Shown here one piece after another: positions 2,246-15,630 of a stretch of 15,630 nucleotides of DNA. Made by a program: the position numbers and the translations under genes. The stretch's first letter is position 1. Each line of letters opens with the position of its first letter. The notes below the pieces were generated by a model. It ran no database searches. It was not told the origin of the DNA and saw only the letters and a list, made by a program, of their open reading frames with translations. The DNA is from Octopus sinensis (Eukaryota), in contig NW_021825390.1 of assembly GCF_006345805.1 (NCBI RefSeq), positions 1 to 15,630 of the forward strand, given 5' to 3'.

Positions 2246-2455
2246 TATTATTGTACCAAGCAGTAAATATATCACCGATATTTCATTAGATGCCGGTGAT
2301 CGTTTGTGTTGTTGTTGTAGATGATGATGATGATGATGTCGAAAAGATTTTTAAAATATATAATTGTGAATTGCGCGTGTAATTTGGGTTGTATATGTGT
2401 ATGCAGTGTTGTGCTTGTGCTTTGAATCCTTTTAACAATGTAATACTACTCTCAA

Positions 2456-2490
2456 TATATATATATATACTATATATATATCTATATATA

Positions 2491-2538
<48 letters not shown>

Positions 2539-2760
2539 AATACTTTTACTTTACAAGAAAGACAGGAAACACAGCATAAACACACGAAGTACATGTACGC
2601 ACACACATTCATACATACATACATACATACATACTCACACACACACGCACACACGCACACACACACACACACACTCAGACACACACACATACATATATAA
2701 ACAACGATACATGTATTTACTTTAAATAATAAACATTTACCTTTGTGGATATTCACACAC
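2456..2760. repeat. (TA)n followed by (CA)n/(TACA)n microsatellites
   Basis: Directly visible. Confidence 0.95.
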
Positions 2761-2821
2761 ACATCCTCTGCTAAACTCATGCTACTAAGCCCCAAATTTG
2801 CTTTTATTAAGGTGATCTATG

Positions 2822-2852
<31 letters not shown>
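2822..2852. repeat. (ACT)n microsatellite
   Basis: Directly visible. Confidence 0.95.
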
Positions 2853-3089
2853 TGTTTCTCATTCTATTTCTGTCGCTCTTTAAGTGTTGGCTATAGACGA
2901 CATGATGATGCCTTGTAAGTAACAACGGAAAGGAACAGAAGAGGGCATGTGAAAAGCGTATAGGGACTCGTAGAAGCCGTCACCAGGAATTCTTAAACAT
3001 AACAGCTCATGGAAGGAAGGATGTGATGGACTCTTGGGCTGTTATTTGAAGCAAGTCGAGTAAACGTTACCATTGCTTTTATGTAAGGC

Positions 3090-3290
3090 TTTTGTGTAAC
3101 CTCATACCAGCTCAAATTTTGCAGACTTTTGGTCAAAGAAGGATCTAGCTAAGACCACCTCATCATTTTTTTTTTCTTCTGGCAGTATATCTGAGACTAC
3201 TGTCTTCTATGTCCTTTCCTTTTACTGATATGATTAGGCGAGGTTAAAGGGCGATTTAGTAGTTATGTCTAGCAGATCGAGAGACTATTT
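3090..3290 (+). mobile_element. Probable degraded interspersed repeat
   Basis: GGGCGATTTAGTAGTTATGTCTAGCAGATCGAGAGACT resembles the 3' end of an octopus repeat recalled from memory. There is no second copy in the window to confirm it. Confidence 0.3.
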
Positions 3291-3396
3291 AGAAATTTCA
3301 TCATTGCCCACGCAGTTGTGTGTATATTTTAAGTGTGTAGATGCGTGCATGCAAAATGTTCAGTGGTAGAAACCATTTTTTACTACTCGTTATGTA

Positions 3397-3407
3397 AACA
3401 CACACAC

Positions 3408-3464
<57 letters not shown>

Positions 3465-3500
3465 CACATACACACACACACACACATGCATACACATACA
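3397..3500. repeat. (CA)n microsatellite
   Basis: Directly visible. Confidence 0.95.
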
Positions 3501-3811
3501 CAAACTCACGGACAGAAGCACACAAATCCATACATGTTAATATACACCCGCACACATGCTTATACGTATGCCTATTCATAGACCACGTGTTGATCAATTA
3601 GGTACCATTTAAGGTACTTTTATGCTAATGTAATTTTTCATTGAAAAGGAAATGTAAATGTAAAACAAACACGACATGTGAAAGGTAACAAAGAAAATTT
3701 ACAGATAATAAATATTTATTAAAAATAAAATGCGATCAAACAACTATAAATAGATAAAAACAACTATAAAAATCTAAAAAGGTATTTATAATCAATATTC
3801 AGGCGACATAA

Positions 3812-4278
3812 GGTGTCGAGCTGACACAGTCATTAACACGTTGGACAAATGCTTAGTGGTATTTCGTCTGTCTAAAGGCGATGAGCTGGCAGAATCGTTA
3901 GCAAGCCGGGCGAAATGCGTAGCCGTATTTCGTCTGCCGTTACGTTCTGAGTTCAAATTCCGTCGAGGTCGACTTTGCATTTCATCCTTTCGGGTTCGAT
4001 AAATTAAGTACCAGTTACGCACTGGTGTCGATATAATCGACTTAATCCGTTTGTCTGTCCTTGTTTGTCCTCTCTGTGTTTAGAGCCTTGTGGGTAGTAA
4101 AGAAATAGGTATTTCGTCTGTCTTTACATTCTGAGTTCAAATTCTGCCAAGATTGACATTACCTTTTATTGTTTCGAGGGCGATAAAATAGGTACCAGTT
4201 GATCACTGGGGTCGATGCAATCGACTTAACCCCTCCTTCGAAATTGCCGGTATTGTGCCAAAATTTGAAATCAGTATT
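3812..4278 (+). mobile_element. Old family-A SINE (3812-3873 + 4108-4278) interrupted by a younger family-A SINE (3874-4107) with a 16-bp TSD
   Basis: GGTATTTCGTCTGTCT occurs at 3858-3873 and 4108-4123, flanking a complete, well-preserved copy (head GGCGATGAGCTGGCAGAATCG, tail GTAGTAAAGAAATA). Removing the insert restores a collinear older copy. Confidence 0.88.
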
Positions 4279-4289
4279 TGTCTCTTTAA

Positions 4290-4505
4290 GGAGGCGAGCA
4301 GGCAGAATTATTAATATGCCGGGAAAAATGTTTAGCCGCATTTCGTCCGTCTTTACGTTCTGAGTTCAAGTTTCGCCGAGGTCAGCTTTATCTTTTATCC
4401 TTTCGGGGTCGATAAAATAAGTACCAGTTGTGTACATGGGTCGATGTAATCGACTTATCTCCTCCCGCTAAGTCGCTGGCCTTATGCCAAAATTTGAAGC
4501 CAATA
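4290..4505 (+). mobile_element. Family-A SINE, older subfamily (tail GCCTTATGCCAAAATTTGAAGCCAATA)
   Basis: Head GGAGGCGAGCAGGCAGAAT, GTTCTGAGTTCAAG and TTTCGGGGTCGATAAAATAAGTACCAGTT are collinear with the other copies. Confidence 0.88.
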
Positions 4506-4531
4506 TCCAGGAGGCAAGTCTGTATGATTGT

Positions 4532-4782
4532 GGAGGCGTGTGGCTTAATGGTTAGGGTTATGGACTCATGATCGTAAGATTGTTGTTTCAATTGCTGGAA
4601 CGAACGTGGCGCGTTGTGGTCTTGAGCAAAGCACTTTCTTTCACATTGCTCCAGTCCACTCAGCTGGCAAAAATGGGTCATCCTGCGACGGACCAGCGTT
4701 CTGTCCAGGCGAGGTGTATACACGTGATGGAAACCGGGAAACCGGCCCTTATGAGTCGACATGACTCGGCAAGATAACTTTA
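4532..4782 (+). mobile_element. tRNA-derived CORE-type SINE (family B)
   Basis: A-box TGGCTTAATGG at 4541-4551 and degenerate B-box GTTTCAATTGC at 4585-4595. CORE-like GCGTTGTGGTCTTGAGCAAAGCACTTT from 4611, followed by CTCAGCTGGCAAAAATGGG and CCTGCGACGGACCAGCG. Confidence 0.8.
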
Positions 4783-4789
4783 TAGCTGT

Positions 4790-4920
4790 ATAGTTCTGAA
4801 ATTCATCTTGCAAACATGCGGTTTCGGGTTCAGTCGCACTGCGGGGAACCTTTGGCTAGTGTCTTCTATAACCTCATCTCAACAATAGCCTTCTGAGTGA
4901 ACTTCGTAGACAGAAAGTAT
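4790..4920 (+). mobile_element. 5' half of a tRNA/CORE SINE (family C) running into a (TG)/(TA) microsatellite
   Basis: B-box-like GGTTCAGTCGC at 4827-4837, CORE-like ACCTTTGGCTAGTGTCTTCTA, then GCCTTCTGAGTGAACTTCGTAGACAGAAAG followed by (TG)n. This matches the layout of an abundant octopus SINE with an internal microsatellite (from memory). Confidence 0.65.
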
Positions 4921-5044
4921 GTGTGTGTGTGTGAATGAACGTGTGTGTGCGTATGTGTGATTGTGTGTGTATACATATATTACATACGTATATATATATA
5001 TGTATTTATATATATGTATATTATATATATATAGATATATATAT

Positions 5045-5077
<33 letters not shown>

Positions 5078-5094
5078 GATATATATATATATAT
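4920..5094. repeat. (TG)n/(TA)n microsatellite
   Basis: Directly visible. Confidence 0.95.
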
Positions 5095-5170
5095 GGCATT
5101 ACTACACGTAAATGCCACACACTAGGACCGACTTTTAAAGCCATAACTGACCACTGAGCCATGCGCCTTG
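5095..5170 (-). mobile_element. Short SINE head fragment
   Basis: The minus strand reads GGCGCATGGCTCAGTGGTCAG, containing the A-box TGGCTCAGTGG. No recognisable B-box or body follows. Confidence 0.4.
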
Positions 5171-5173
5171 ACT

Positions 5174-5424
5174 TACTACTACTACTACTATTACTACTAC
5201 TACTACTACTACTACTACTAACTACTACTACTACTGCTACTACTATCCTACTACTACTACTACTACTACTAATACTACTAATACTAATAAAATAATAATA
5301 TAATAATAATAATAATGATAATAGATAATAATAACGATAATAAAATAATAATAATAATAATAATAATGATAATAATAATAATAATAATAATAATATAATA
5401 ATGATAATAATAATAATAATAATA
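5174..5424. repeat. (ACT)n then (AAT)n microsatellites
   Basis: Directly visible. Confidence 0.95.
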
Positions 5425-5699
5425 CCTTCGTCATTGCAACAATATCAAGACATCATTAAAACCAAAGCTCCGTACCACCACAGCCACTACCAACACCACC
5501 AACAACAATAACACTATCACCACCACCACCACTATCACCACTACCAGCATCACCGCCACTATTTCATCTCTCCACAGCCACGCCACCGCCATATTCTATC
5601 TGTCATAAACAATCCATATTACAATTCATAATAATGAATTAATGATCGCTCCCTCAGATTTTCACAACTTTATCTCAGGATGTCTACTGAGATAGATGA

Positions 5700-6770
5700 T
5701 ACAGTCCCTTGATGGTGGTGGTAGTAAGAATGGTAGTGGTGGTGGTGGTGATGATGATGACAGTACTGATGGTAATGGTGGTGGTGGTGGTGGTAGTAGT
5801 GGTGGTAATGGTTTTGGTAACGGTGGTGGCGAAGGTAGTGGTGATAGTTATGGTGATGGTTGTGGTGGTGATGGTAGTAGTGATGGTGGTGTGATGGTGG
5901 TGGCGAGTTGTGGTGATGGCTGTGGTGATGGTTGTGGTGAATGGTGGTGGTGATGGTTGTGGTGATGGTGATGGTGGTAGTAATGATGGTAGTGGTAGTT
6001 GTGCTGATGGTTGTGGTGCTGGTGCTGGTGGTAGTAATGATGGTGGTGGTGATGGCGATGGTGGTGGTGATAGTTGTGGTGATGTTTGTGGTGGTGGTGG
6101 TAGTAGTGATGATGGTGGTGATGGCGGTGATGATGGTGGTAGCGATGGTTGTGGTGACAGTGGTGGTGCTGGTGGTAGTAATGATGGTGGAGGTGATGGC
6201 GATGGTGGTGATGATAGTTGTGGTGATGTTTGTGGTGGTGGTGGTAGTAGTGATGATGGTGGTAATGATGGTGTTAGCGATGGTTGTGGTGATAGTGGTT
6301 GTGATAGGGGTTATGACGGTGGTGGCGGCGATGGTAGTGATGGTGTTGGAAGTAGGGATGATGGTGGTGATGTTGTTAGAGATGGTAGTAGTGGTGATGG
6401 TAGTGCTGGTGTGTTGGTGGTGGTGATAGTTGTCGTGGTTGTGGTGGTGGTGGTGGTGATATTATTGGCAATGATGATGGCTGTAATGGTTGGTGAAGGG
6501 AATGATGGAGGAAGTGGTAATGGTAATGGTAGCGATGGTAGTGAACACGGTAGTAGGTGTAATGAAGGTAGTGGTGGTGTTGGTGATGGTGATGATGCTG
6601 GCGGTGATGATGATTTTTTTGTAGTAGTGATGGCAGAGGTGTTGGTCATGGTGTTGCTTGAAGTGGTAGTAGTAGTAGTAGTAGTATTAGTAGTAGTAGC
6701 AGCAGCAGTAGTATTAGTAGTAGAATGGTGGTGATGGTGGTGACAGACGTTGAGTTGGTATTGATGATGG
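5700..6770. repeat. (GGT/GAT/AGT)-rich low-complexity tract containing a 144-bp tandem duplication (6021-6164, 6165-6299)
   Basis: GGTGCTGGTGGTAGTAATGATGG...GATAGTTGTGGTGATGTTTGTGGTGGTGGTGGTAGTAGTGATGATGG...AGCGATGGTTGTGGTGA recurs 144 bp apart. Confidence 0.9.
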
Positions 6771-6902
6771 AGATGAAACCACCTTCAGCCAGTCTTGCAA
6801 GTATTAGAGCTGGGATACAAGGAGTCTCTGTAATATTTTTTCTGAAAAGAAAAAAAATACAGAATTTACGGTCTGTTGGTAGCTTTGACTGAGGAGACAT
6901 AA

Positions 6903-7910
6903 AAGAAGTTCGAAACACCGCAGTATTTTAAATGTGACCTATATGAGGAAGCTTTAAAAAGTTTATTTGATATAATCCACCGCACAAAACGTGTGTAAAA
7001 ATGAGTAGTAAAAAACGCTTCTAATTCATATCGAAAAGTAGTTTCTAAACGACGGTTTATTCCATCTGCTGCTTCACAGAAACGACGCCAAAGTGAGTGA
7101 GAGTTCCATGGGCAAAATTCTATATAGCCATTAAAATCCATAACGCAAAGATATTTCGAAAAATCCCAGCAAAAAGCTATCTGAATGTAAAACTTTAATC
7201 CTTTAATAGTAAATACATTGCGAAAGACTTTGTAACTTTTGTTGATGTCTTTTGTGTAATACAACAAGCTACACATATCTTATTAAGTCCTCTTGCAACA
7301 GCTCGTTCGAGTAATCACCACAACACTTTCACAGTATATCTGGATGTTGAAACCAAAATCAAAATTAACAAAAAATACCAGTAACAGCACACTAAAGAAG
7401 TAACAAAAAAAAGTCATGAATAATCTTTATATATAAAGTAAGGTTTGTGTTCTGTCTGATTTAGATTCCTACTACTTTTAGATTCCTAACTACTCACTCA
7501 CACATTTTGCGGTGCAGTTAACCAAAACCGGGTATCTTATAGTCGTGATTCATATCGAGCCCTTCTGGGATTAGTGCGCGTCTACGATGAGTCTACGATT
7601 AAAAAAAAAAATTACCATCATTTTTTTCCATTTTAATGCATTTTTTTGCTATTTTTGGGCTATAACTCTCTAAATATGGAAGTAACTCTCTAAAAATGTC
7701 TACGATGAGTCAACGATTTAAAAAAAATTTACCATAATTTTTTTTTCCATTTTTAATGCATTTTTTTGCTATTTTTTGGCTATAACTCTCTAAAAATGCT
7801 TATATAGTTATTTCCCTTACAAACCCGACCAACGCCGGGCGATACTGCTAGTATATACTAAGACTTTTGTACAACGGAGAGATTCCACATCACCCGGCAT
7901 CCAAACGCGA
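6903..7910 (+). pseudogene. Possible highly decayed Gypsy/GIN-type (KRBA2/SCAND3-like) integrase, split by the Helitron
   Basis: Peptide fragments in shifting frames, in the expected order: SLFDIIHRT (6960-6986), FNSKYIAKDFVTFVDVFCVIQQATHILLS (7202-7288), FVQRRDSTSPGI (7866-7901). They resemble LFDIIH.AH, LKSKRAEEVA..LLDIF..FGAP.ILQSDNG and FVQ..KN..HHSGIKRSPY as recalled. The catalytic motifs themselves are not preserved. Confidence 0.35.
7424..7851 (+). mobile_element. Non-autonomous Helitron, copy 1 (with internal 118-bp-period duplication)
   Basis: 5' TC (TCTTTATATATAAA), subterminal hairpin CCCGACCAACGCCGGG at 7824-7839, 3' CTAG at 7848-7851. Inserted between A7423 and T7852 with no TSD. 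A close homologue lies at 14519-14804. Confidence 0.9.
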
Positions 7911-8156
7911 TCTTCGAATATAGAAAGCGAACATATTTCAACTTACCGAGCATATTTTCATTTGGACGTGTGACAATATGTAAACATCGAAAACTTAAAG
8001 CATTAAGTTGATGTCCTCAGAAAGTTTTAAGACAACTAACCTTAATAAAAATGTATACAAGTAAATCAAAATAAAATCAAAATAAGGGCACACACACACA
8101 TACACACACACACACATATATGCATACATATACAAACATACATACATACTTATATG

Positions 8157-8529
8157 GCCCAGTGGTTAGGGCAGCGGACTCGCGGTCGTAGGATCGCAGT
8201 TTCCATTCCCAGACCGGGCGTTGTGAGTGTTTATTGAGCGAAAACACCTAAAGCTCCACGAGGCTCCGGCAGGGGGTGGTGGTGATCCCTGCTGTATTCT
8301 TTCACCACAACTTTCTCTCACTCTTACTTCCTGTTTCTGTTGTACCTGTATTTCAAAGGGCCGGCCTTGTCACTCTCTGTGTCACGCTGAATATCCCCGA
8401 GAACTACGTTAAGGGTACACGTGTCTGTGTAGTGCTCAGCCACTTGCACGTTAATTCCACGAGCAGGCTGTTCCGTTGATCGGATCAACCGGAACCCTCG
8501 TCGTCGAAACTGACGGAGTGCTTCCATCC
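8157..8529 (+). mobile_element. tRNA-derived SINE (family D) with 13-bp TSD
   Basis: ACATACTTATATG at 8144-8156 and 8530-8542. A-box (TG)GCCCAGTGG, degenerate B-box GTTTCCATTCC, CORE-like GCGTTGTGAGTGTTTATTGAGCGAAAACACCT, and a TCCA-repeat tail. Confidence 0.88.
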
Positions 8530-8859
8530 ACATACTTATATGCCGTACTTATCAAACGCAAACTAGTATATAATATATCCATTTCGGTGTGTGAGAGTTA
8601 TGTTGTGCATACAATATATATAGCTGTTATGCTATTCTAAGATAATAAAACTAAATGCGGGCATAGAATTCTATTGCCCTTCGGTCTCAATATGTCTTTC
8701 TTTGTGCATAGCTATGCGTGTATGCAAGTGTATGTACGTGTATAATTGTATGGATACGTTGATTAGTATCTATGTGGTGTATGATCTTGTACGATTGTAA
8801 CTATACTTATATATGGTTAATCTATTCATCTCTCTATCAATTTTCTCTTCCATATAACC

Positions 8860-8936
<77 letters not shown>

Positions 8937-8937
8937 C

Positions 8938-9034
<97 letters not shown>

Positions 9035-9060
9035 CGTCCGTCCGTCCGTCCGACTGTCTG
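8860..9060. repeat. Compound tetranucleotide microsatellite (TATC)n-(TGTC)n-(CGTC)n
   Basis: Directly visible. Confidence 0.95.
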
Positions 9061-9245
9061 CCTGTCTGTCTGTATGTCTGCCAGTCTGCCATTCCGTGTG
9101 TATCTGTCACTTTCAATAAATCAATCAACTAGTCTTTCTCTCTTCCTGTCGATATCTGTTTATTTGTGTCTGTTTTTCTGTTAGCTTGCCTGCATGTCTG
9201 TCTGTCTTCTGTATATATATATATACACACATACAATCATCTTCC

Positions 9246-9344
<99 letters not shown>

Positions 9345-9399
9345 CCTATCGACCTATCTATCTATCTATCTACCTATCTATGTATACATACATAATACA

Positions 9400-9431
<32 letters not shown>

Positions 9432-9589
9432 CATATATATATATACTATATATATTTACATACATATAAAATAAATATATACATATACATATGTATGAGA
9501 GACTTAGAAATATTAATATTTCTACATATGTATATATATACATACCTACATACATCATATATATATATATAATATATATACATATATAT

Positions 9590-9672
<83 letters not shown>

Positions 9673-9715
9673 GTATATATATATCTATCATATATATATA
9701 CATATATACATATAT
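9246..9715. repeat. (TATC)n then long (TA)n microsatellites
   Basis: Directly visible. Confidence 0.95.
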
Positions 9716-9927
9716 GCATGTCTATCTGAACGCATTTGTATGAATATGTATGCGTATGTGCCTGAATGTGTATGTGATTGTCACTAACTATTTCTGCAGA
9801 AATTTGACAGTATGTGCCGTAGCGTTTGTGTATCGATCTGTGAAGTATGATTGCTTGTATCTACGCCTGTTTCTGTGTGCAGAGGTGCATATGTATATGT
9901 GTAAATACATATATGCGTGAATGCATG

Positions 9928-9975
9928 CATACATACATACATACATACATACATACATACATACATACATACATG
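9928..9975. repeat. (TACA)n microsatellite
   Basis: Directly visible. Confidence 0.95.
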
Positions 9976-10078
9976 CATGCATACGTACTCACATGCATAA
10001 ATGCATACACACACTAATAAAGCACTTCTTTAGATCTTGATGGAATAAAAACAAGTCAAACAACGAAATATTTGGCAA

Positions 10079-10079
10079 T

Positions 10080-10140
<61 letters not shown>

Positions 10141-10160
10141 CCACCATCACCACCACCACC

Positions 10161-10194
<34 letters not shown>

Positions 10195-10200
10195 TCATCA
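10079..10200. repeat. (CAT)n-(CAC)n-(CAT)n microsatellite
   Basis: Directly visible. Confidence 0.95.
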
Positions 10201-10779
10201 TTAACAACAAAAACAAAAACTTCTGCCATCTTCTTTATTATTTATCTAATTATCATCAACGGAAGCATATATTTATAAATACATACAGACCCACAGACAC
10301 ACGCATATATACACAAACGCATGTACACACACACACACACACACACACACATATTTATATATACGCATGTGTATATATTTCCTTGTATACATCTGCCTTT
10401 AAGAAGGTTCTATAATAACTTGCTTCTGTGTGTGTCTGTATGTGCATCTGACGTTATTGCCTATCTGACTGTGTGTATGTATGTGTGTGTGTGTGTGTAG
10501 GTGTGTATGCGTGCGTGTGCGAGTGTGTGTGTGCTTGTCTGTAATGAGGGGGCCATCTGGAATATTGCAGACCAAATAAATTAAAAGCGAATTTGTCACA
10601 TGCAACTTCAGAACGAGGCTTTATTGACCTCTTGTGTCCCGGATTGCAAAAGGCAAAACGAGACATCTGGGACAGTTCCTTTTGCTTTGTTTTTTTTTCT
10701 CTTTTCTTTTAACTATTTCCTATTTTCTAATTCTTCTTTAGATCTTGATGAAACAGAAACAACAACGATATAATTCTGT

Positions 10780-10893
10780 ATCATCATCATCATCATTACC
10801 AACACCAACGCCGTCACTATCTTCTCCATTATCATCATATTGATCATTGCCGTCGTCGTTGGCGCCGTTATCATCATCATCATCATCATCATC

Positions 10894-10928
<35 letters not shown>

Positions 10929-11206
10929 TATCATCGTCAGCGTCATTATCGCCATCATCATGGTCGTCATCATCATCATCATCATCATCATCACCATAAT
11001 CATCATCATATAGTACCGCTACCACGACCACCACGACCTCTATCACATCATCATCATCATCATCACCATCATCTCTGTCATTACTAACGCCGTCTTTTTT
11101 ATGGAGTAGAATATTATCATTTGTAAAATCACAAATTATCATCATCAACATCATTTTTGTCATCATCATCATCACAATTAGCATTCTTATAAAATCAATT
11201 TTCATG

Positions 11207-11273
<67 letters not shown>

Positions 11274-11662
11274 TCAGGCATCAATCATGTTTATTATCAT
11301 CACCATCATCACCATCATCAACAGAATAACAATAGTATTATCGTCATCACTATCCTCATAGTCGTAACATTCACCTCATCATTATCATCTCCGTCATCGT
11401 TTTCCTCCTCCTGGTCTTGCTGCTCCTCCTGTTCCTCCTGCTGCCTCTCCTCCTCGTCATCATAACCACTATCCCCGCAGCCACCCACCACCACCACCGT
11501 CAGCACCACAACAAACACTATCATTGCAAACATCACCACCATCTCACTGCTACCACCGCAACCACAAAAACAACAACTACAACTACCATCAGCATCACAT
11601 GCACCAGAACCAGCATCATGACCATCACCACCACCACCACCACCACCACCATCACCACCACC

Positions 11663-11708
<46 letters not shown>

Positions 11709-12060
11709 CCATCGCCACCACCATTGTACTTGCATCATACCACCACCATCTCAACAATATCAATAACAGCACCATCAACAATCACACCACAAACTACCAT
11801 CACTACCACCACAGCCACAACAACAACTACCACCAGCACTACGACCGGTACCACCTCTGTACCAGACCAGCACCAATGCCACACCAGTACCAGCGCCGCC
11901 GCCACCGCCACCACCGCCTCCACCACCGCCTCCACCATCGCCGCCACCACCGCCACCGACGTTGCCAATCGTACTAGTATCATACCACCATCACCACCAC
12001 CTTAACAACCTCAATAACTACACAAACTACAGCCACCAACACAACCAGCACCATCACCTT
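10780..12060. repeat. (CAT)n, (AAT)n and (CAC/AAC)-rich low-complexity tracts
   Basis: Directly visible; (AAT)n lies at about 11207-11270. Confidence 0.92.
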
Positions 12061-12808
12061 CTCCGTTTTCTTTTCTCGTCCTTATATTTTATCTCCTATG
12101 CTTTTAGTTTTATCTTAGTTACGTCCCTTGCCATGGTAGCTCTTCAGAAGTTTACACATCCAAATAATATTTTGCCATCATTTCCTATCTTTATGGGATT
12201 ATTTGCTTCACTATATTTTACTATTCTACTGTATTTTCTTACGTATTTGTTAACACAGTCTGATACAATTAATTCATTTATTTGTTAGGTTATCCAAACT
12301 AGTTCTTCTACTCTGAGATAATCCAAAGAAATTTAATAATTCACTCCAGACATCCGAAAATCTCCACCCACTCAACGTTAAATAGATATTAATTCAGACG
12401 CTTGTTCTATTTTTTCTTTCTCCGCAAATTAATTTAATAATATTTCGCGAACATCTAAAGGCTTTTCTACTTTTCGTATAATTTTTCCTTTGCTTAGACA
12501 ATATTCTAATAATTTCAATTAAATGAACGCAGTTATTATATATAAACATTTAACCAACTTTGCTCTCTTTACAAAGTATATTATGGTAAGATAAACAAAG
12601 CTAATAAAATTATAATTCTATCATCTATAGCTTCGTTTCTTAGTACTAGTTTAATAATATTCTGTATGATCATTCACTACTATAATGGCCTCTGTTTCTC
12701 TGAGCTGGATGGTTTTTGTATTTACCTCTACGTGGTAACTTGATTTGCTAGACATAGGAATCATATGTCCCTCAAGTTGCAAATACCTGTCATATATTTG
12801 ATCCTTTG

Positions 12809-13145
12809 TCTTTTATTTGTTTCTGTTTCAGTCATAAGACTGCGGCCAAGTGCGAGCAATGTTTTGTAGGGTTTAATCGAATAAATTGACACCGGTACCT
12901 ATTTGTTAGTCTGGTACTTACTATATCACACTCTGTTGCGGAATCGTGATGTTACGAGGACGTAAACTAAACAACACCGGAGGTCAAAGCGGTGGTGAAG
13001 GTTATATACAAAGGCACACACATAGACATATACTTACAAACACACACACACACACACACAAACTCACACGTACACACGCATAAATACATACATACATACA
13101 TACATACATACATACATACATACATACATACATACATACATACAC
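12809..13145 (-). mobile_element. 3' half of family-C SINE plus its internal (CA)/(TACA) microsatellite
   Basis: The + strand reads TGTTTCAGTCATAAGACTGCGGCCA..., the reverse-strand tail motif seen again at 13320-13360. The minus strand contains TAAGTACCAG and GGTGTCAATTTATTCGATT, related to the family-A central block. Confidence 0.75.
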
Positions 13146-13314
13146 ATATCTATATGAAATGTATTGTAGAATATACATCTTAATAAACATACAATTTTAA
13201 CCTCGGTATCTACCAAGCTGAATCAAGAGTTTTTTCGTATTTCAAACAAATTACATAGGAAAAGTGTTTATCCATCAAAGCGCATTCTATTATCTGTTTA
13301 TGTTTATGTTTATG

Positions 13315-14478: not shown

Positions 14479-14518
14479 TATCAAAGCTGTAAAATAGAGA
14501 ACATACAATTAATGATTA

Positions 14519-14804
14519 TCTTTATATATAAAAGTCAAGTTGTATGTCTGTCTCCTACGATTTAGATTCCTAACTACTCCACATTTGCGGTGCAGTAGTT
14601 TAACCAAAACGGGTATCTTATAGTCGTGATTCATATCGAACCCTTCTGGGTATTAGTGCGCGTCTACGATGAGTCTACGATTAAAAAAAAAATTTTTTTT
14701 CCATTTTTAATGAATTTTTTGCTATTTTTTGGCTATAACTCTCTAAAAATGCTTATATAGTTATTTCCCTTACAAACCCGAGCAACGCCGGGCGATACTG
14801 CTAG
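14519..14804 (+). mobile_element. Non-autonomous Helitron, copy 2
   Basis: A|TCTTTATATATAAAAG ... CCCGAGCAACGCCGGG hairpin ... CTAG|T. Collinear with 7424-7851 but lacks the internal duplication. Confidence 0.9.
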
Positions 14805-14954
14805 TATGTTATATACGAAAATAAAGAATAACACAATTGTGCAACGACTCGGTTACAAGTTGTATCAACAGTTCTATATTTAAGAGATGAGGAATTATGT
14901 ACACTATTTACATTATTTACATTATTTACATTTGTTCTCATCTTGTTTGTTGTT

Positions 14955-14998
14955 AATACAACGTTTCGGCTGATACCCTCCAGCCTTCATCAAGTGTC
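14955..14998 (-). ncRNA. Degenerate minimal type-I hammerhead ribozyme-like motif (left arm)
   Basis: Minus strand: GACAC-TTGATGA-A-GGCTG(GAGGGTAT)CAGCC-GAA-ACGT-T-GTATT. This shows the core UGAUGA, a 5-bp stem II, GAAA, a palindromic ACGU in place of stem III, and stem I GACAC/GUAUU with one mismatch. Position 3 is U rather than C. Confidence 0.6.
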
Positions 14999-15238
14999 TT
15001 GGGGAAATTTCGAACCTGCCTTCTCATTCCTAAGGTATTTTTCGATGTTGTTGTTGTTGTTGTTGTTGTTATTATTATTATTATTATTCAAGTCACTGCC
15101 TTGAATCGAAATCGGAATCTTGGGGTTAGTAGCCCGCGCTCTTAACCACAGTGGGCATATGGCGTAGTATTTAAGATCGCGGGCTACTAACCCCAAGATT
15201 CCGAGTTCGATTCAAGGCAGTGACCTGAATAATAATAA

Positions 15239-15286
<48 letters not shown>

Positions 15287-15338
15287 AATCAACAACAATA
15301 ACAACAACAACAACAACAACAACAACAACGACGACGAC

Positions 15339-15380
<42 letters not shown>

Positions 15381-15427
15381 TCGAAAAATACCTTAAGAAT
15401 GAGAACCGAGGTTCGAAATTTCCCCAA

Positions 15428-15483
15428 GACACTTGATGGTGGGTATATCAGGCTGGTGGGTATATCAGCCGAAACATTGTGTT
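15428..15483 (+). ncRNA. Disrupted hammerhead-like motif (right arm)
   Basis: GACAC-TTGATG-[GTGGGTATATCA, duplicate of 15456-15467]-GGCTG(GTGGGTATAT)CAGCC-GAAACATT-GTGTT. Stem I GACAC/GUGUU and stem II are intact; the core is broken. Confidence 0.45.
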
Positions 15484-15630
15484 AACAACAAACAACAAAC
15501 AAGATGTGCACAATGTTTGTCAATAGTAAATTAAAGTTGTATCAAATTAATGAAATGACATGGAGAAAGAAGTTGCCAAAAGTCATCAGTGAAAATATGA
15601 AATCAACTTTTGACGAAACTTGGAATACAT

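What the first reader, a model, noticed from the sequence alone, without database searches (positions are those of the whole stretch)
14869..15533. Palindromic head-to-head retroposon dimer inserted as a single event (12-bp TSD)
Two arms of the same element point outwards from a centre CCAC-A-GTGG (15146-15154). The right arm starts GTGGGCATATGGCGTAGT. The left arm starts at the internal GTGG of the A-box (GTGGTTAAGAGC), a 4-nt microhomology suggesting fold-back or template switching. One direct repeat, AAGTTGTATCAA (14857-14868, 15534-15545), brackets the whole 665 bp, so the dimer presents a 3' tail at both ends. Ordinary SINEs insert as head-to-tail monomers, whereas inverted terminal arrangements are known for Penelope-like elements. 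A transcript crossing this region would fold into a long dsRNA hairpin, a potential ADAR/siRNA substrate in an animal group known for heavy A-to-I editing (inference).
Basis: partly seen in the sequence, partly recalled or inferred. Interest (0 to 1): 0.75.

Follow-up and report, generated by a model that had tools for sequence, protein, structure and literature searches.

The report
Head-to-head retroposon pair, Penelope-style insertion
Two copies of one short retroposon sit head-to-head between a single 12-bp target duplication, and a hammerhead-ribozyme-like motif plus a one-sided extension suggest this is the usual insertion footprint of Penelope-like retroelements, not a new way for SINEs to insert.

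Summary
Two arms of one element (14869-15149 on the minus strand, 15151-15533 on the plus strand) meet at CCAC-A-GTGG. A 12-mer found nowhere else in the window brackets them (about 0.3% of shuffles give a 12-mer).

Each arm has four parts: a tRNA-promoter-like head, an (AAT)n(AAC)n tract, a unique body and a 9-nt-repeat tail. The unique parts are about 92% identical between arms.

New here:
- The body carries a minimal hammerhead-like motif of the kind published for Penelope-like elements (PLEs). It is complete in the left arm and broken by a duplication in the right arm.
- The left arm is 5'-truncated and has a 26-34-nt outer extension that the right arm lacks.

An inverted 5'-truncated copy abutting a full copy, one TSD around both, a one-sided 30-40-bp tail and a link with (AAT)n/(AAC)n are all published PLE insertion features.

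Best reading: a SINE-like, PLE-dependent non-autonomous retroposon inserted in the standard PLE manner, so a new member of a known kind.

Caveats:
- Rfam hammerhead and tRNA models do not hit.
- Core position 3 is U in both arms.
- The 4-nt junction palindrome is weak (p about 0.09).
- A 5-nt ACAGT repeat flanking the left arm leaves sequential insertion open.
- No other copy could be reached, and the host organism is unknown.

The parts
14857..14868 (+). Left copy of the 12-bp target-site duplication, AAGTTGTATCAA
   Evidence: (D7): only two occurrences in the window. An exact repeat of 12 nt or more arose in 9 of 3000 shuffles.
14869..14894 (-). One-sided 3' extension ('tail') of the left arm, TTCCTCATCTCTTAAATATAGAACTG in the sense orientation. 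The right arm has no counterpart. It may reach about 14902.
   Evidence: It matches the 30-40-bp tail found at only one end of PLE inserts (PMC8557442, PMC3846280). It pairs with AAGATGAG upstream to form a 3' hairpin in the fold.
14894..14932 (-). Left-arm 3' tail made of about 4.3 copies of a 9-nt tandem unit (ATTATTTAC on the plus strand)
   Evidence: TRF; D2.
14933..15046 (-). Left-arm unique 3' body
   Evidence: 89% identical to the right-arm body.
14955..14998 (-). Minimal hammerhead-like motif: GACAC / U3-UGAUGA / A / GGCUGG-AGGGUA-UCAGCC / GAAA / CG / U-U | GUAUU
   Evidence: Own descriptor: the only hit in the window and 0 hits in 400 random 15.6-kb sequences. Features as described in PMC4209133. 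Not detected by the Rfam models. Position 3 is U, not C.
15047..15088 (-). Left-arm internal microsatellite, (AAT)6(AAC)8 in the sense orientation
15089..15149 (-). Left-arm tRNA-promoter-like head, 5'-truncated by 16 nt. It starts at GTGG of the A box. B-box-like ATTTCGATTCA lies at 15112-15102.
15146..15154 (.). Head-to-head junction, a 4+1+4 palindrome CCAC-A-GTGG
   Evidence: arm length 4; chance about 0.09.
15151..15227 (+). Right-arm full-length head. A-box-like TGGCGTAGTAT at 15160-15170 and B-box-like GAGTTCGATTCA at 15203-15214.
   Evidence: The A+B box pair occurs once in the window and in 4 of 1000 random sequences. ARAGORN and Rfam tRNA searches were negative.
15228..15379 (+). Right-arm internal microsatellite, expanded and interrupted: (AAT)3(AAC)n..(GAC)3(ATA)14
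15380..15533 (+). Right-arm unique 3' body and short tail, ending ..CAATAGTAAATTA directly at the TSD
15428..15483 (+). Right-arm relic of the hammerhead-like motif. The core is broken by an 11-17-nt duplication (15437-15470), and CpG has decayed to CpA at positions 15.2/16.2. It keeps the better helix I (GACAC/GUGUU).
   Evidence: (D5). Not found by the descriptor.
15534..15545 (+). Right copy of the 12-bp target-site duplication

Best explanation
Each arm is a copy of a short non-autonomous retroposon. It has a tRNA-type Pol III promoter head, an internal (AAT)n(AAC)n tract, a 3' body with a Penelope-type minimal hammerhead-like motif, and a short tandem-repeat tail.

The 665-bp unit is the product of one integration by Penelope-like-element (PLE) type target-primed reverse transcription. 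That process characteristically leaves an inverted, 5'-truncated copy abutting the 5' end of a full copy, one target-site duplication around both, and an optional extension of about 30 bp at one outer end.

Inferred mechanism: both 3'-OH ends of the staggered 12-bp break prime cDNA synthesis on element 3' ends. The top-strand cDNA (left arm) stops at position 16 of its template. The bottom-strand cDNA (right arm) reaches the RNA 5' end and continues by an end-to-end template jump onto the other cDNA. The published alternative of self-priming is also possible.

Shown: the anatomy, the TSD, the motif and the extension. Inferred: the single event, the PLE machinery, the order of steps and Pol III transcription.

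Sub-confidences: real inverted pair of one retroposon 0.97, single event about 0.65-0.7, PLE-type machinery about 0.5-0.55.
For: - Collinear arms, 92% identical in unique sequence.
- A unique 12-bp direct repeat sits exactly at both outer ends (9 of 3000 shuffles). Neither arm has a comparable repeat of its own.
- The left arm is truncated by 16 nt, whereas the right arm starts 2 nt upstream of GGGC, the start of the tRNA-like region.
- The left arm matches a min-HHR descriptor built from the published description. It is the only hit in the window, and 400 random windows gave none.
- That match has an unpaired nucleotide between A9 and G10.1, a G10.1-C11.1 pair, a 6-bp helix II, a palindromic ACGU at positions 15.1-16.1, and a 5-bp helix I preserved in the right arm. 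The authors list these as emergent features of PLE hammerheads (PMC4209133). They also note pairs of motifs 100-700 bp apart on opposite strands.
- A one-sided extension of 26-34 nt corresponds to the PLE 'tail'.
- PLE pLTRs alone can be mobilised in trans with a TSD. PLEs are associated with (AAT)n/(AAC)n and microsatellites, and palindromes occur at inverted head-to-head junctions (PMC3846280, PMC8557442).
- Non-autonomous hammerhead-bearing relatives of PLEs, and Pol III SINE-like hammerhead elements, are known.
- An intact 12/12 TSD is compatible with the divergence between the arms (P = 0.38).
Against: - No Rfam hammerhead model reports either arm, even at E <= 10.
- Core position 3 is U with G8 in both arms. 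The published variant is U3-A8, so the motif is probably catalytically weak or a relic.
- My descriptor was written after I had seen the sequence.
- The tRNA origin of the head is not confirmed by ARAGORN or Rfam.
- The tail of 9-nt tandem repeats looks like the 3' ends of some LINE/SINE pairs.
- The arms differ by about 8%, by a threefold difference in microsatellite length and by a 17-nt duplication. They may therefore come from different templates or different times.
- A 5-nt ACAGT repeat flanks the left arm alone.
- No PLE coding sequence lies in the window.
- No other copy of the element could be retrieved anywhere.
Confidence: 0.5

Rival explanations
1. An ordinary LINE-dependent tRNA-SINE inserted as an inverted pair in one event. 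Both nicked strands primed on SINE 3' tails, a twin-priming variant that uses full templates, with no Penelope involvement. The hammerhead-like motif would be coincidental or irrelevant.
For: - A/B-box head.
- Tail of 9-nt tandem repeats of the sort seen at stringent LINE/SINE 3' ends.
- Single 12-bp TSD.
- Rfam finds no hammerhead.
Against: - The min-HHR-like motif is very unlikely by chance.
- The 26-34-nt non-repeat extension between the left arm's tail repeats and the TSD has no explanation in LINE-type TPRT.
- Classical twin priming gives an inverted internal segment adjacent to the direct one, not two overlapping full copies each ending in a 3' tail.
Confidence: 0.2
2. Two sequential insertions. 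The right copy inserted first and made the 12-bp TSD. Later a second, 5'-truncated copy inserted in the opposite orientation exactly at its 5' boundary, making a 5-bp ACAGT duplication.
For: - ACAGT sits at 14868-14872 and 15148-15152, exactly at both ends of the left arm.
- The arms differ by about 8%, by microsatellite length and by a 17-nt duplication.
- PLEs are said to insert into or next to pre-existing copies (PMC6765202).
Against: - It requires an insertion within 0-4 bp of the older copy's 5' end.
- A 5-mer match is expected by chance in zones of this size. It is notable only for its position.
- The published PLE cases with this anatomy, including one with a verified empty site, are single events.
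Confidence: 0.2
3. A foldback or MITE-type DNA transposon whose long terminal inverted repeats happen to contain tRNA-like sequence.
For: Long inverted arms and a flanking direct repeat.
Against: - The termini are not inverted repeats of each other. The outer 26-34 nt on the left has no partner on the right.
- The arms have retroposon polarity: promoter head, then body, then repeat tail.
- One arm is 5'-truncated.
- From general knowledge, a 12-bp TSD is atypical for DNA transposon superfamilies.
Confidence: 0.05
4. A post-insertion inverted duplication of a monomer, or an assembly artefact.
For: Palindromes can arise from replication fold-back or from chimeric long reads.
Against: - The flanking 12-mers are direct repeats. 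A palindromic duplication would give an inverted flank.
- The arms differ by about 8% plus several indels, so this is not a read-level artefact.
Confidence: 0.03

Closest known systems
Penelope-like element insertion units (direct pLTR plus adjacent inverted 5'-truncated pLTR; Arkhipova et al. 2013, PMC3846280; Craig et al. 2021, PMC8557442)
   Same: - Head-to-head inverted, 5'-truncated copy abutting a full copy.
- One TSD around the whole unit (8-10 bp in the cited cases).
- Short palindrome at the junction.
- An optional extension of about 30 bp at one outer end.
- A hammerhead motif in the repeated part.
- Association with (AAT)n/(AAC)n tracts.
   Different: - There is no ORF, and no RT or GIY-YIG coding sequence. 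The whole unit is 665 bp.
- The repeated unit begins with a tRNA-type Pol III promoter, not a pLTR promoter.
- The junction palindrome is only 4+1+4 nt, against 15-38 bp in the cited cases.
- The TSD is 12 bp.
[quoted passage not shown]
   Same: A short non-autonomous retroposon with A/B-box promoter elements upstream of a type-I hammerhead-like motif.
   Different: - Sm-alpha carries a canonical, active hammerhead that Rfam-type models detect, and it is often tandemly repeated.
- Here the motif is the minimal PLE type with U3, and Rfam does not detect it.
- The copies are inverted, not tandem.
- No sequence homology was tested.
Metazoan non-LTR retrozymes (non-autonomous hammerhead-bearing derivatives of PLE pLTRs; bioRxiv 10.64898/2026.07.22.740005; PMC8969392 calls them a possible new type of SINE)
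   Same: Small, non-coding, hammerhead-bearing and thought to depend on PLE enzymes. Monomeric dispersed copies exist.
   Different: Retrozymes are defined by tandem repeats and circular RNAs, and they have no tRNA-like promoter head. This locus is an inverted pair with a TSD.
L1 twin priming (inversion with 5' truncation; recalled from general knowledge, not tested against a paper here)
   Same: Both strands of the staggered break serve as primers in one event. The product has an inverted 5' part and is flanked by one TSD.
   Different: Twin priming copies adjacent, non-overlapping parts of one RNA. Here both arms cover the same sequence, including the 3' end.

Membership tests
PLE-type insertion unit | An inverted, 5'-truncated copy immediately adjacent to the 5' end of a direct copy (head-to-head) | tested here: met
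   The left arm lacks the first 16 nt, and the arms are 1 nt apart.
PLE-type insertion unit | A single target-site duplication flanking the whole unit | tested here: met
   A 12-bp exact repeat, unique in the window, seen in 9 of 3000 shuffles. Neither arm has a comparable repeat of its own, only a 5-mer around the left arm.
PLE-type insertion unit | A 30-40-bp extension ('tail') at only one outer end | tested here: inconclusive
   The left arm has 26-34 extra nt that the right arm lacks. Without a family consensus, it cannot be shown to be an extension of the left arm as opposed to a deletion in the right arm.
PLE-type insertion unit | A palindrome at the inverted junction | tested here: inconclusive
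   Only a 4+1+4 palindrome. About 9% of random positions match this.
PLE-type insertion unit | Sequence relationship to an autonomous PLE (pLTR or 3' end), or presence of RT/GIY-YIG elements in the genome | not testable with these tools
   No eukaryotic genome collection is available. The window has no coding remnant, and all motif and protein look-ups came back empty.
Hammerhead ribozyme, PLE minimal type I (min-HHR) | Catalytic core C3-U4-G5-A6-N7-G8-A9 and G12-A13-A14 | tested here: not met
   Both arms have U3 with G8. All other core positions are present in the left arm. The published covariant is U3-A8.
Hammerhead ribozyme, PLE minimal type I (min-HHR) | [quoted passage not shown] | tested here: met
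   - Left arm: A bulge, GGCUGG/UCAGCC (6 bp) and ACGU-U.
- Helix I is 5 of 5 pairs in the right arm and 4 of 5 in the left.
- 0 hits in 400 random windows.
Hammerhead ribozyme, PLE minimal type I (min-HHR) | Recognised by a curated covariance model | tested here: not met
   No Rfam hammerhead family reported at E <= 10 on either arm.
Hammerhead ribozyme, PLE minimal type I (min-HHR) | Self-cleavage | not testable with these tools
   Needs in vitro transcription of monomeric and dimeric constructs.
tRNA-derived SINE | Internal Pol III A and B boxes at tRNA-like spacing | tested here: met
   TRGCNNAGT, then 25-50 nt, then GTTCGANNC occurs once in the window (right arm) and in 4 of 1000 random sequences. 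The full A box TGGCGTAGTGG is seen only when the two arms are combined.
tRNA-derived SINE | A recognisable tRNA-like sequence or cloverleaf | tested here: not met
   - ARAGORN found nothing even at relaxed thresholds, including on a hybrid of the two arms.
- There was no Rfam tRNA hit.
- A resemblance to tRNA-Arg is my recollection only.
tRNA-derived SINE | Many dispersed copies, and a 3' end shared with a partner LINE | not testable with these tools
   No further copy in the window or in any reachable collection.
L1-type twin priming product | The inverted and direct segments are adjacent, non-overlapping parts of one template | tested here: not met
   Both arms cover the same sequence from head to 3' tail.
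MITE / foldback DNA transposon | Terminal inverted repeats reaching the element ends | tested here: not met
   The outer 26-34 nt of the left end has no inverted partner at the right end.

The most novel reading that the evidence does not exclude
This is one copy of an undescribed family of Pol III (tRNA-promoter) SINEs that use Penelope-like-element reverse transcriptase/endonuclease instead of a LINE. On this reading the PLE-specific integration footprint (inverted truncated partner, one-sided tail) can be read in a 665-bp non-coding insert.
Probability: 0.3. Interest if true: 0.6.

Novelty: new member of a known kind. Interest (0 to 1): 0.4.

Why it matters
The PLE integration mechanism is still described as undefined (PMC8557442). 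Short non-autonomous inserts that carry the whole footprint, meaning the TSD, the tail, the inverted truncated partner and the junction, are convenient natural material for working it out.

A SINE-PLE partnership outside flatworms would also change how 'unclassified SINEs' are annotated in mollusc genomes.

At this locus, the practical consequence is a 280-bp imperfect hairpin that any read-through transcript would form. As a single locus it is otherwise ordinary repeat biology.

Tried and rejected
1. Other copies in the window: blastn with both arms found only microsatellite matches.
2. Exact-motif scans with a 22-mer from the head and a 23-mer from the body: no hits in viral, metagenome or prokaryotic genome collections.
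3. Protein back door: antisense and sense peptides translated from the arms found no candidates.
4. Exact look-up of two window ORFs next to or inside the dimer: not on record.
5. Literature search for diagnostic sequence strings: no papers.
6. tRNA detection: ARAGORN default and relaxed, also on a hybrid head, and Rfam all found nothing. The Rfam miRNA hits over the centre are generic hairpin matches.
7. Rfam hammerhead models on each arm: nothing.
8. Paralogous empty site: the neighbouring repeat family's homology stops about 60 bp before the insertion point.
9. Pfam on the non-repetitive ORFs: nothing, so there is no PLE or LINE coding remnant.
10. Simple microhomology annealing of the two cDNA ends at GTGG/CCAC: rejected on logic. 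Both 3' ends would read CCAC and are not complementary.
11. An editing-like A/G bias between the arms: none (4 A/G changes among 13 mismatches).
12. Three papers (PMC5785218, PMC108972, PMC522041) are not held in the library.

Full report
**Observation.** The repeat finder reports two long inverted repeats:
- 15039-15145 against 15171-15277 (107 nt, 90% complementary);
- 14988-15087 against 15339-15438 (100 nt, 88% complementary).

It also reports the exact 12-mer AAGTTGTATCAA at 14857-14868 and 15534-15545. That 12-mer occurs nowhere else in the window on either strand. An exact repeat of 12 nt or more between generous 120-nt zones around the two ends arose in 9 of 3000 shuffles. The centre CCAC-A-GTGG lies at 15146-15154, and its perfect palindrome arms are 4 nt long. 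The 665-nt unit folds into one long hairpin (-317 kcal/mol, z = -32), which follows trivially from the inverted repeat.

**Anatomy of one arm.** Gapped alignment of the right arm with the reverse complement of the left arm shows the same order of parts in both:
- A head of about 75 nt. It has A-box-like and B-box-like motifs (TGGCGTAGT.. at 15160 and GAGTTCGATTCA at 15203 in the right arm).
- An internal (AAT)n(AAC)n tract, 42 nt in the left arm and about 150 nt, with interruptions, in the right.
- A unique body of about 115 nt.
- A tail built from a 9-nt unit (TRF).

Identity is 91.8% in the head, 89.4% in the body, and 92.4% (K2P 0.081) over 170 confidently aligned unique positions. The A+B box pair at tRNA-like spacing occurs once in the window and in 4 of 1000 random sequences.

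ARAGORN, even relaxed and run on a hybrid of the two arms, and Rfam do not recognise a tRNA. 'tRNA-derived' therefore remains an inference from the promoter boxes and from my own recollection of a resemblance to tRNA-Arg. The right arm begins at GTGGGCAT, 2 nt before the start of the tRNA-like region. The left arm begins 16 nt further in, at the GTGG of the A box.

**The hammerhead-like motif.** The body of the left arm reads, in the sense orientation (14998 down to 14955):

GACAC-UUGAUGA-A-GGCUGG[AGGGUA]UCAGCC-GAAA-CG-U-U|GUAUU

[quoted passage not shown] It includes features those authors stress were not part of their search descriptor:
- a G10.1-C11.1 pair;
- a longer helix II;
- palindromic positions 15.2-16.2;
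- a short helix I.

A descriptor I wrote from that text, allowing C or U at position 3, hits the window exactly once, at this spot. It hit none of 400 random 15.6-kb sequences. The right arm carries the same motif, broken by a duplication of 11-17 nt (15437-15470; D5) and by a CpG-to-CpA change. It preserves the better helix I (GACAC/GUGUU). With that strand restored, the region folds into helices I and II.

There are three points against:
- No Rfam hammerhead model reports either arm, even at E <= 10.
- Position 3 is U in both arms with G8 retained, whereas the published covariant is U3-A8.
- The descriptor was written after I had seen the motif.

I read it as a genuine, probably weak or relic, PLE-type hammerhead.

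**Asymmetry at the outer ends.** The right arm ends in tail repeats that abut the TSD directly. The left arm continues for 26 nt (14869-14894, possibly to about 14902) of non-repeat sequence before its TSD copy. In the fold this extension pairs with AAGATGAG upstream of the tail repeats.

**Comparison with documented PLE insertions.** Arkhipova et al. 2013 (PMC3846280) describe the 'typical Penelope structure' with these features:
- direct pLTRs plus an adjacent inverted pLTR that is shorter than the full ones;
- the whole insert flanked by a 9-bp TSD (8 and 10 bp in other cases, one with a verified empty site);
- palindromes at the inverted junction, with head-to-head the most frequent arrangement;
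- pLTRs alone sufficient for mobilisation in trans;
- involvement of (AAT)n/(AAC)n tracts.

Craig et al. 2021 (PMC8557442) repeat these points. [quoted passage not shown] They also describe a microsatellite bias and a mechanism 'still undefined'. Cervera and de la Pena note pairs of min-HHRs 100-700 bp apart on opposite strands.

Non-autonomous hammerhead-bearing relatives of PLEs (retrozymes) and Pol III SINE-like hammerhead elements (Sm-alpha) are also known. The present locus shows each of these anatomical features in miniature.

**Mechanism (inferred).** In a 12-bp staggered break, the bottom-strand 3'-OH to the right of the target and the top-strand 3'-OH to the left can each prime on an element 3' end. 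That places an antisense copy on the top strand (the left arm) and a sense copy on the right, each with its 3' end next to a TSD copy. This is the observed geometry.

The two cDNA 3' ends would both read ...CCAC, so they cannot anneal to each other. The GTGG/CCAC symmetry is thus not a usable microhomology, and statistically it is weak (p about 0.09). An end-to-end template jump from the RNA 5' end onto the other cDNA fits the 1-nt spacer better. So does the self-priming route proposed by Arkhipova et al.

A simple palindromic duplication of a monomer with its flank is excluded, because the flanking 12-mers are direct and not inverted. An assembly artefact is excluded by the 8% divergence and the indels between the arms.

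**Rivals.**
- Sequential insertion is the main rival. A 5-nt ACAGT repeat sits exactly at both ends of the left arm, the arms differ appreciably, and PLEs are said to insert next to existing copies. It needs a hit within a few bp of the older copy's 5' end.
- A LINE-driven single event is the other. It is favoured by the tandem-repeat tail and the Rfam negatives, and disfavoured by the hammerhead-like motif and the unexplained extension.
- A foldback or MITE element fails because the termini are not inverted repeats of each other.

An intact 12/12 TSD is compatible with the divergence between the arms (P = 0.38), so age does not discriminate between these.

**What could not be done.** No eukaryotic genome collection is available, and every indirect route to other copies or to the orthologous locus failed. 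As a result:
- the family consensus, the copy-number census and the partner element are all untested;
- the empty site and the host taxon are untested;
- the ADAR/siRNA suggestion is untested, and the arm-to-arm substitution spectrum shows no A/G excess.

If the host is an octopus, the published context is SINEs at about 11.6% of the genome, mostly unclassified families, alongside active Penelope families (PMC13282606). In the passages I searched, none of the cephalopod repeat papers mentions PLE-linked SINEs or inverted SINE pairs.

**Verdict.** The mechanism claim and the novelty claim are weakened. I rate it a new member of a known kind, of moderate interest.

Noticed in passing
window 7425-7852 and 14512-14813 (+): A second repeat family with two copies, 82-97% identical. 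Copy 1 has an internal tandem duplication of about 120 bp (7580-7798). Both copies begin A|TC.. and end ..CCCGA(C/G)CAACGCCGGGCGATACTGCTAG|T, with a GC-rich near-hairpin about 8 nt before CTAG. This looks like a short non-autonomous Helitron. It ends about 55 bp upstream of the dimer.
   Followed up: partly
window 14868-14872 and 15148-15152: A 5-nt direct repeat, ACAGT, sits exactly at both ends of the left arm. It is either chance or the TSD of a separate insertion of that arm.
   Followed up: partly
window 15437-15470 (+): A 17-nt tandem duplication, TGGTGGGTATATCAG(G/C)C, inside the right arm. It interrupts the hammerhead-like core there (D5).
   Followed up: yes
window 5731-6458 (+) and 11485-12064: A strongly GC-skewed TGG/TGA-rich minisatellite (144-bp period) and a 64%-similar inverted counterpart about 5 kb away. 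GC skew flips from +0.71 to -0.66 between the two regions.
   Followed up: no
window 2455-13146 (many sites): Very dense di-, tri- and tetranucleotide microsatellites, including other (AAT)n/(AAC)n/(ATC)n tracts at 5270-5424, 10080-10201, 10870-11009 and 11207-11271. None of them is flanked by the dimer's head or body. The Rfam mir-297/mir-466 hits are artefacts of (TGTA)n/(CA)n.
   Followed up: partly
window 14884-14944 (-): An inverted repeat (AAGATGAG.. / ..CTCATCTCTT) encloses the left arm's 9-nt tail repeats and forms a 10-bp stem. The right arm has only the 5' half. This may be a 3' stem-loop of the full-length element.
   Followed up: no
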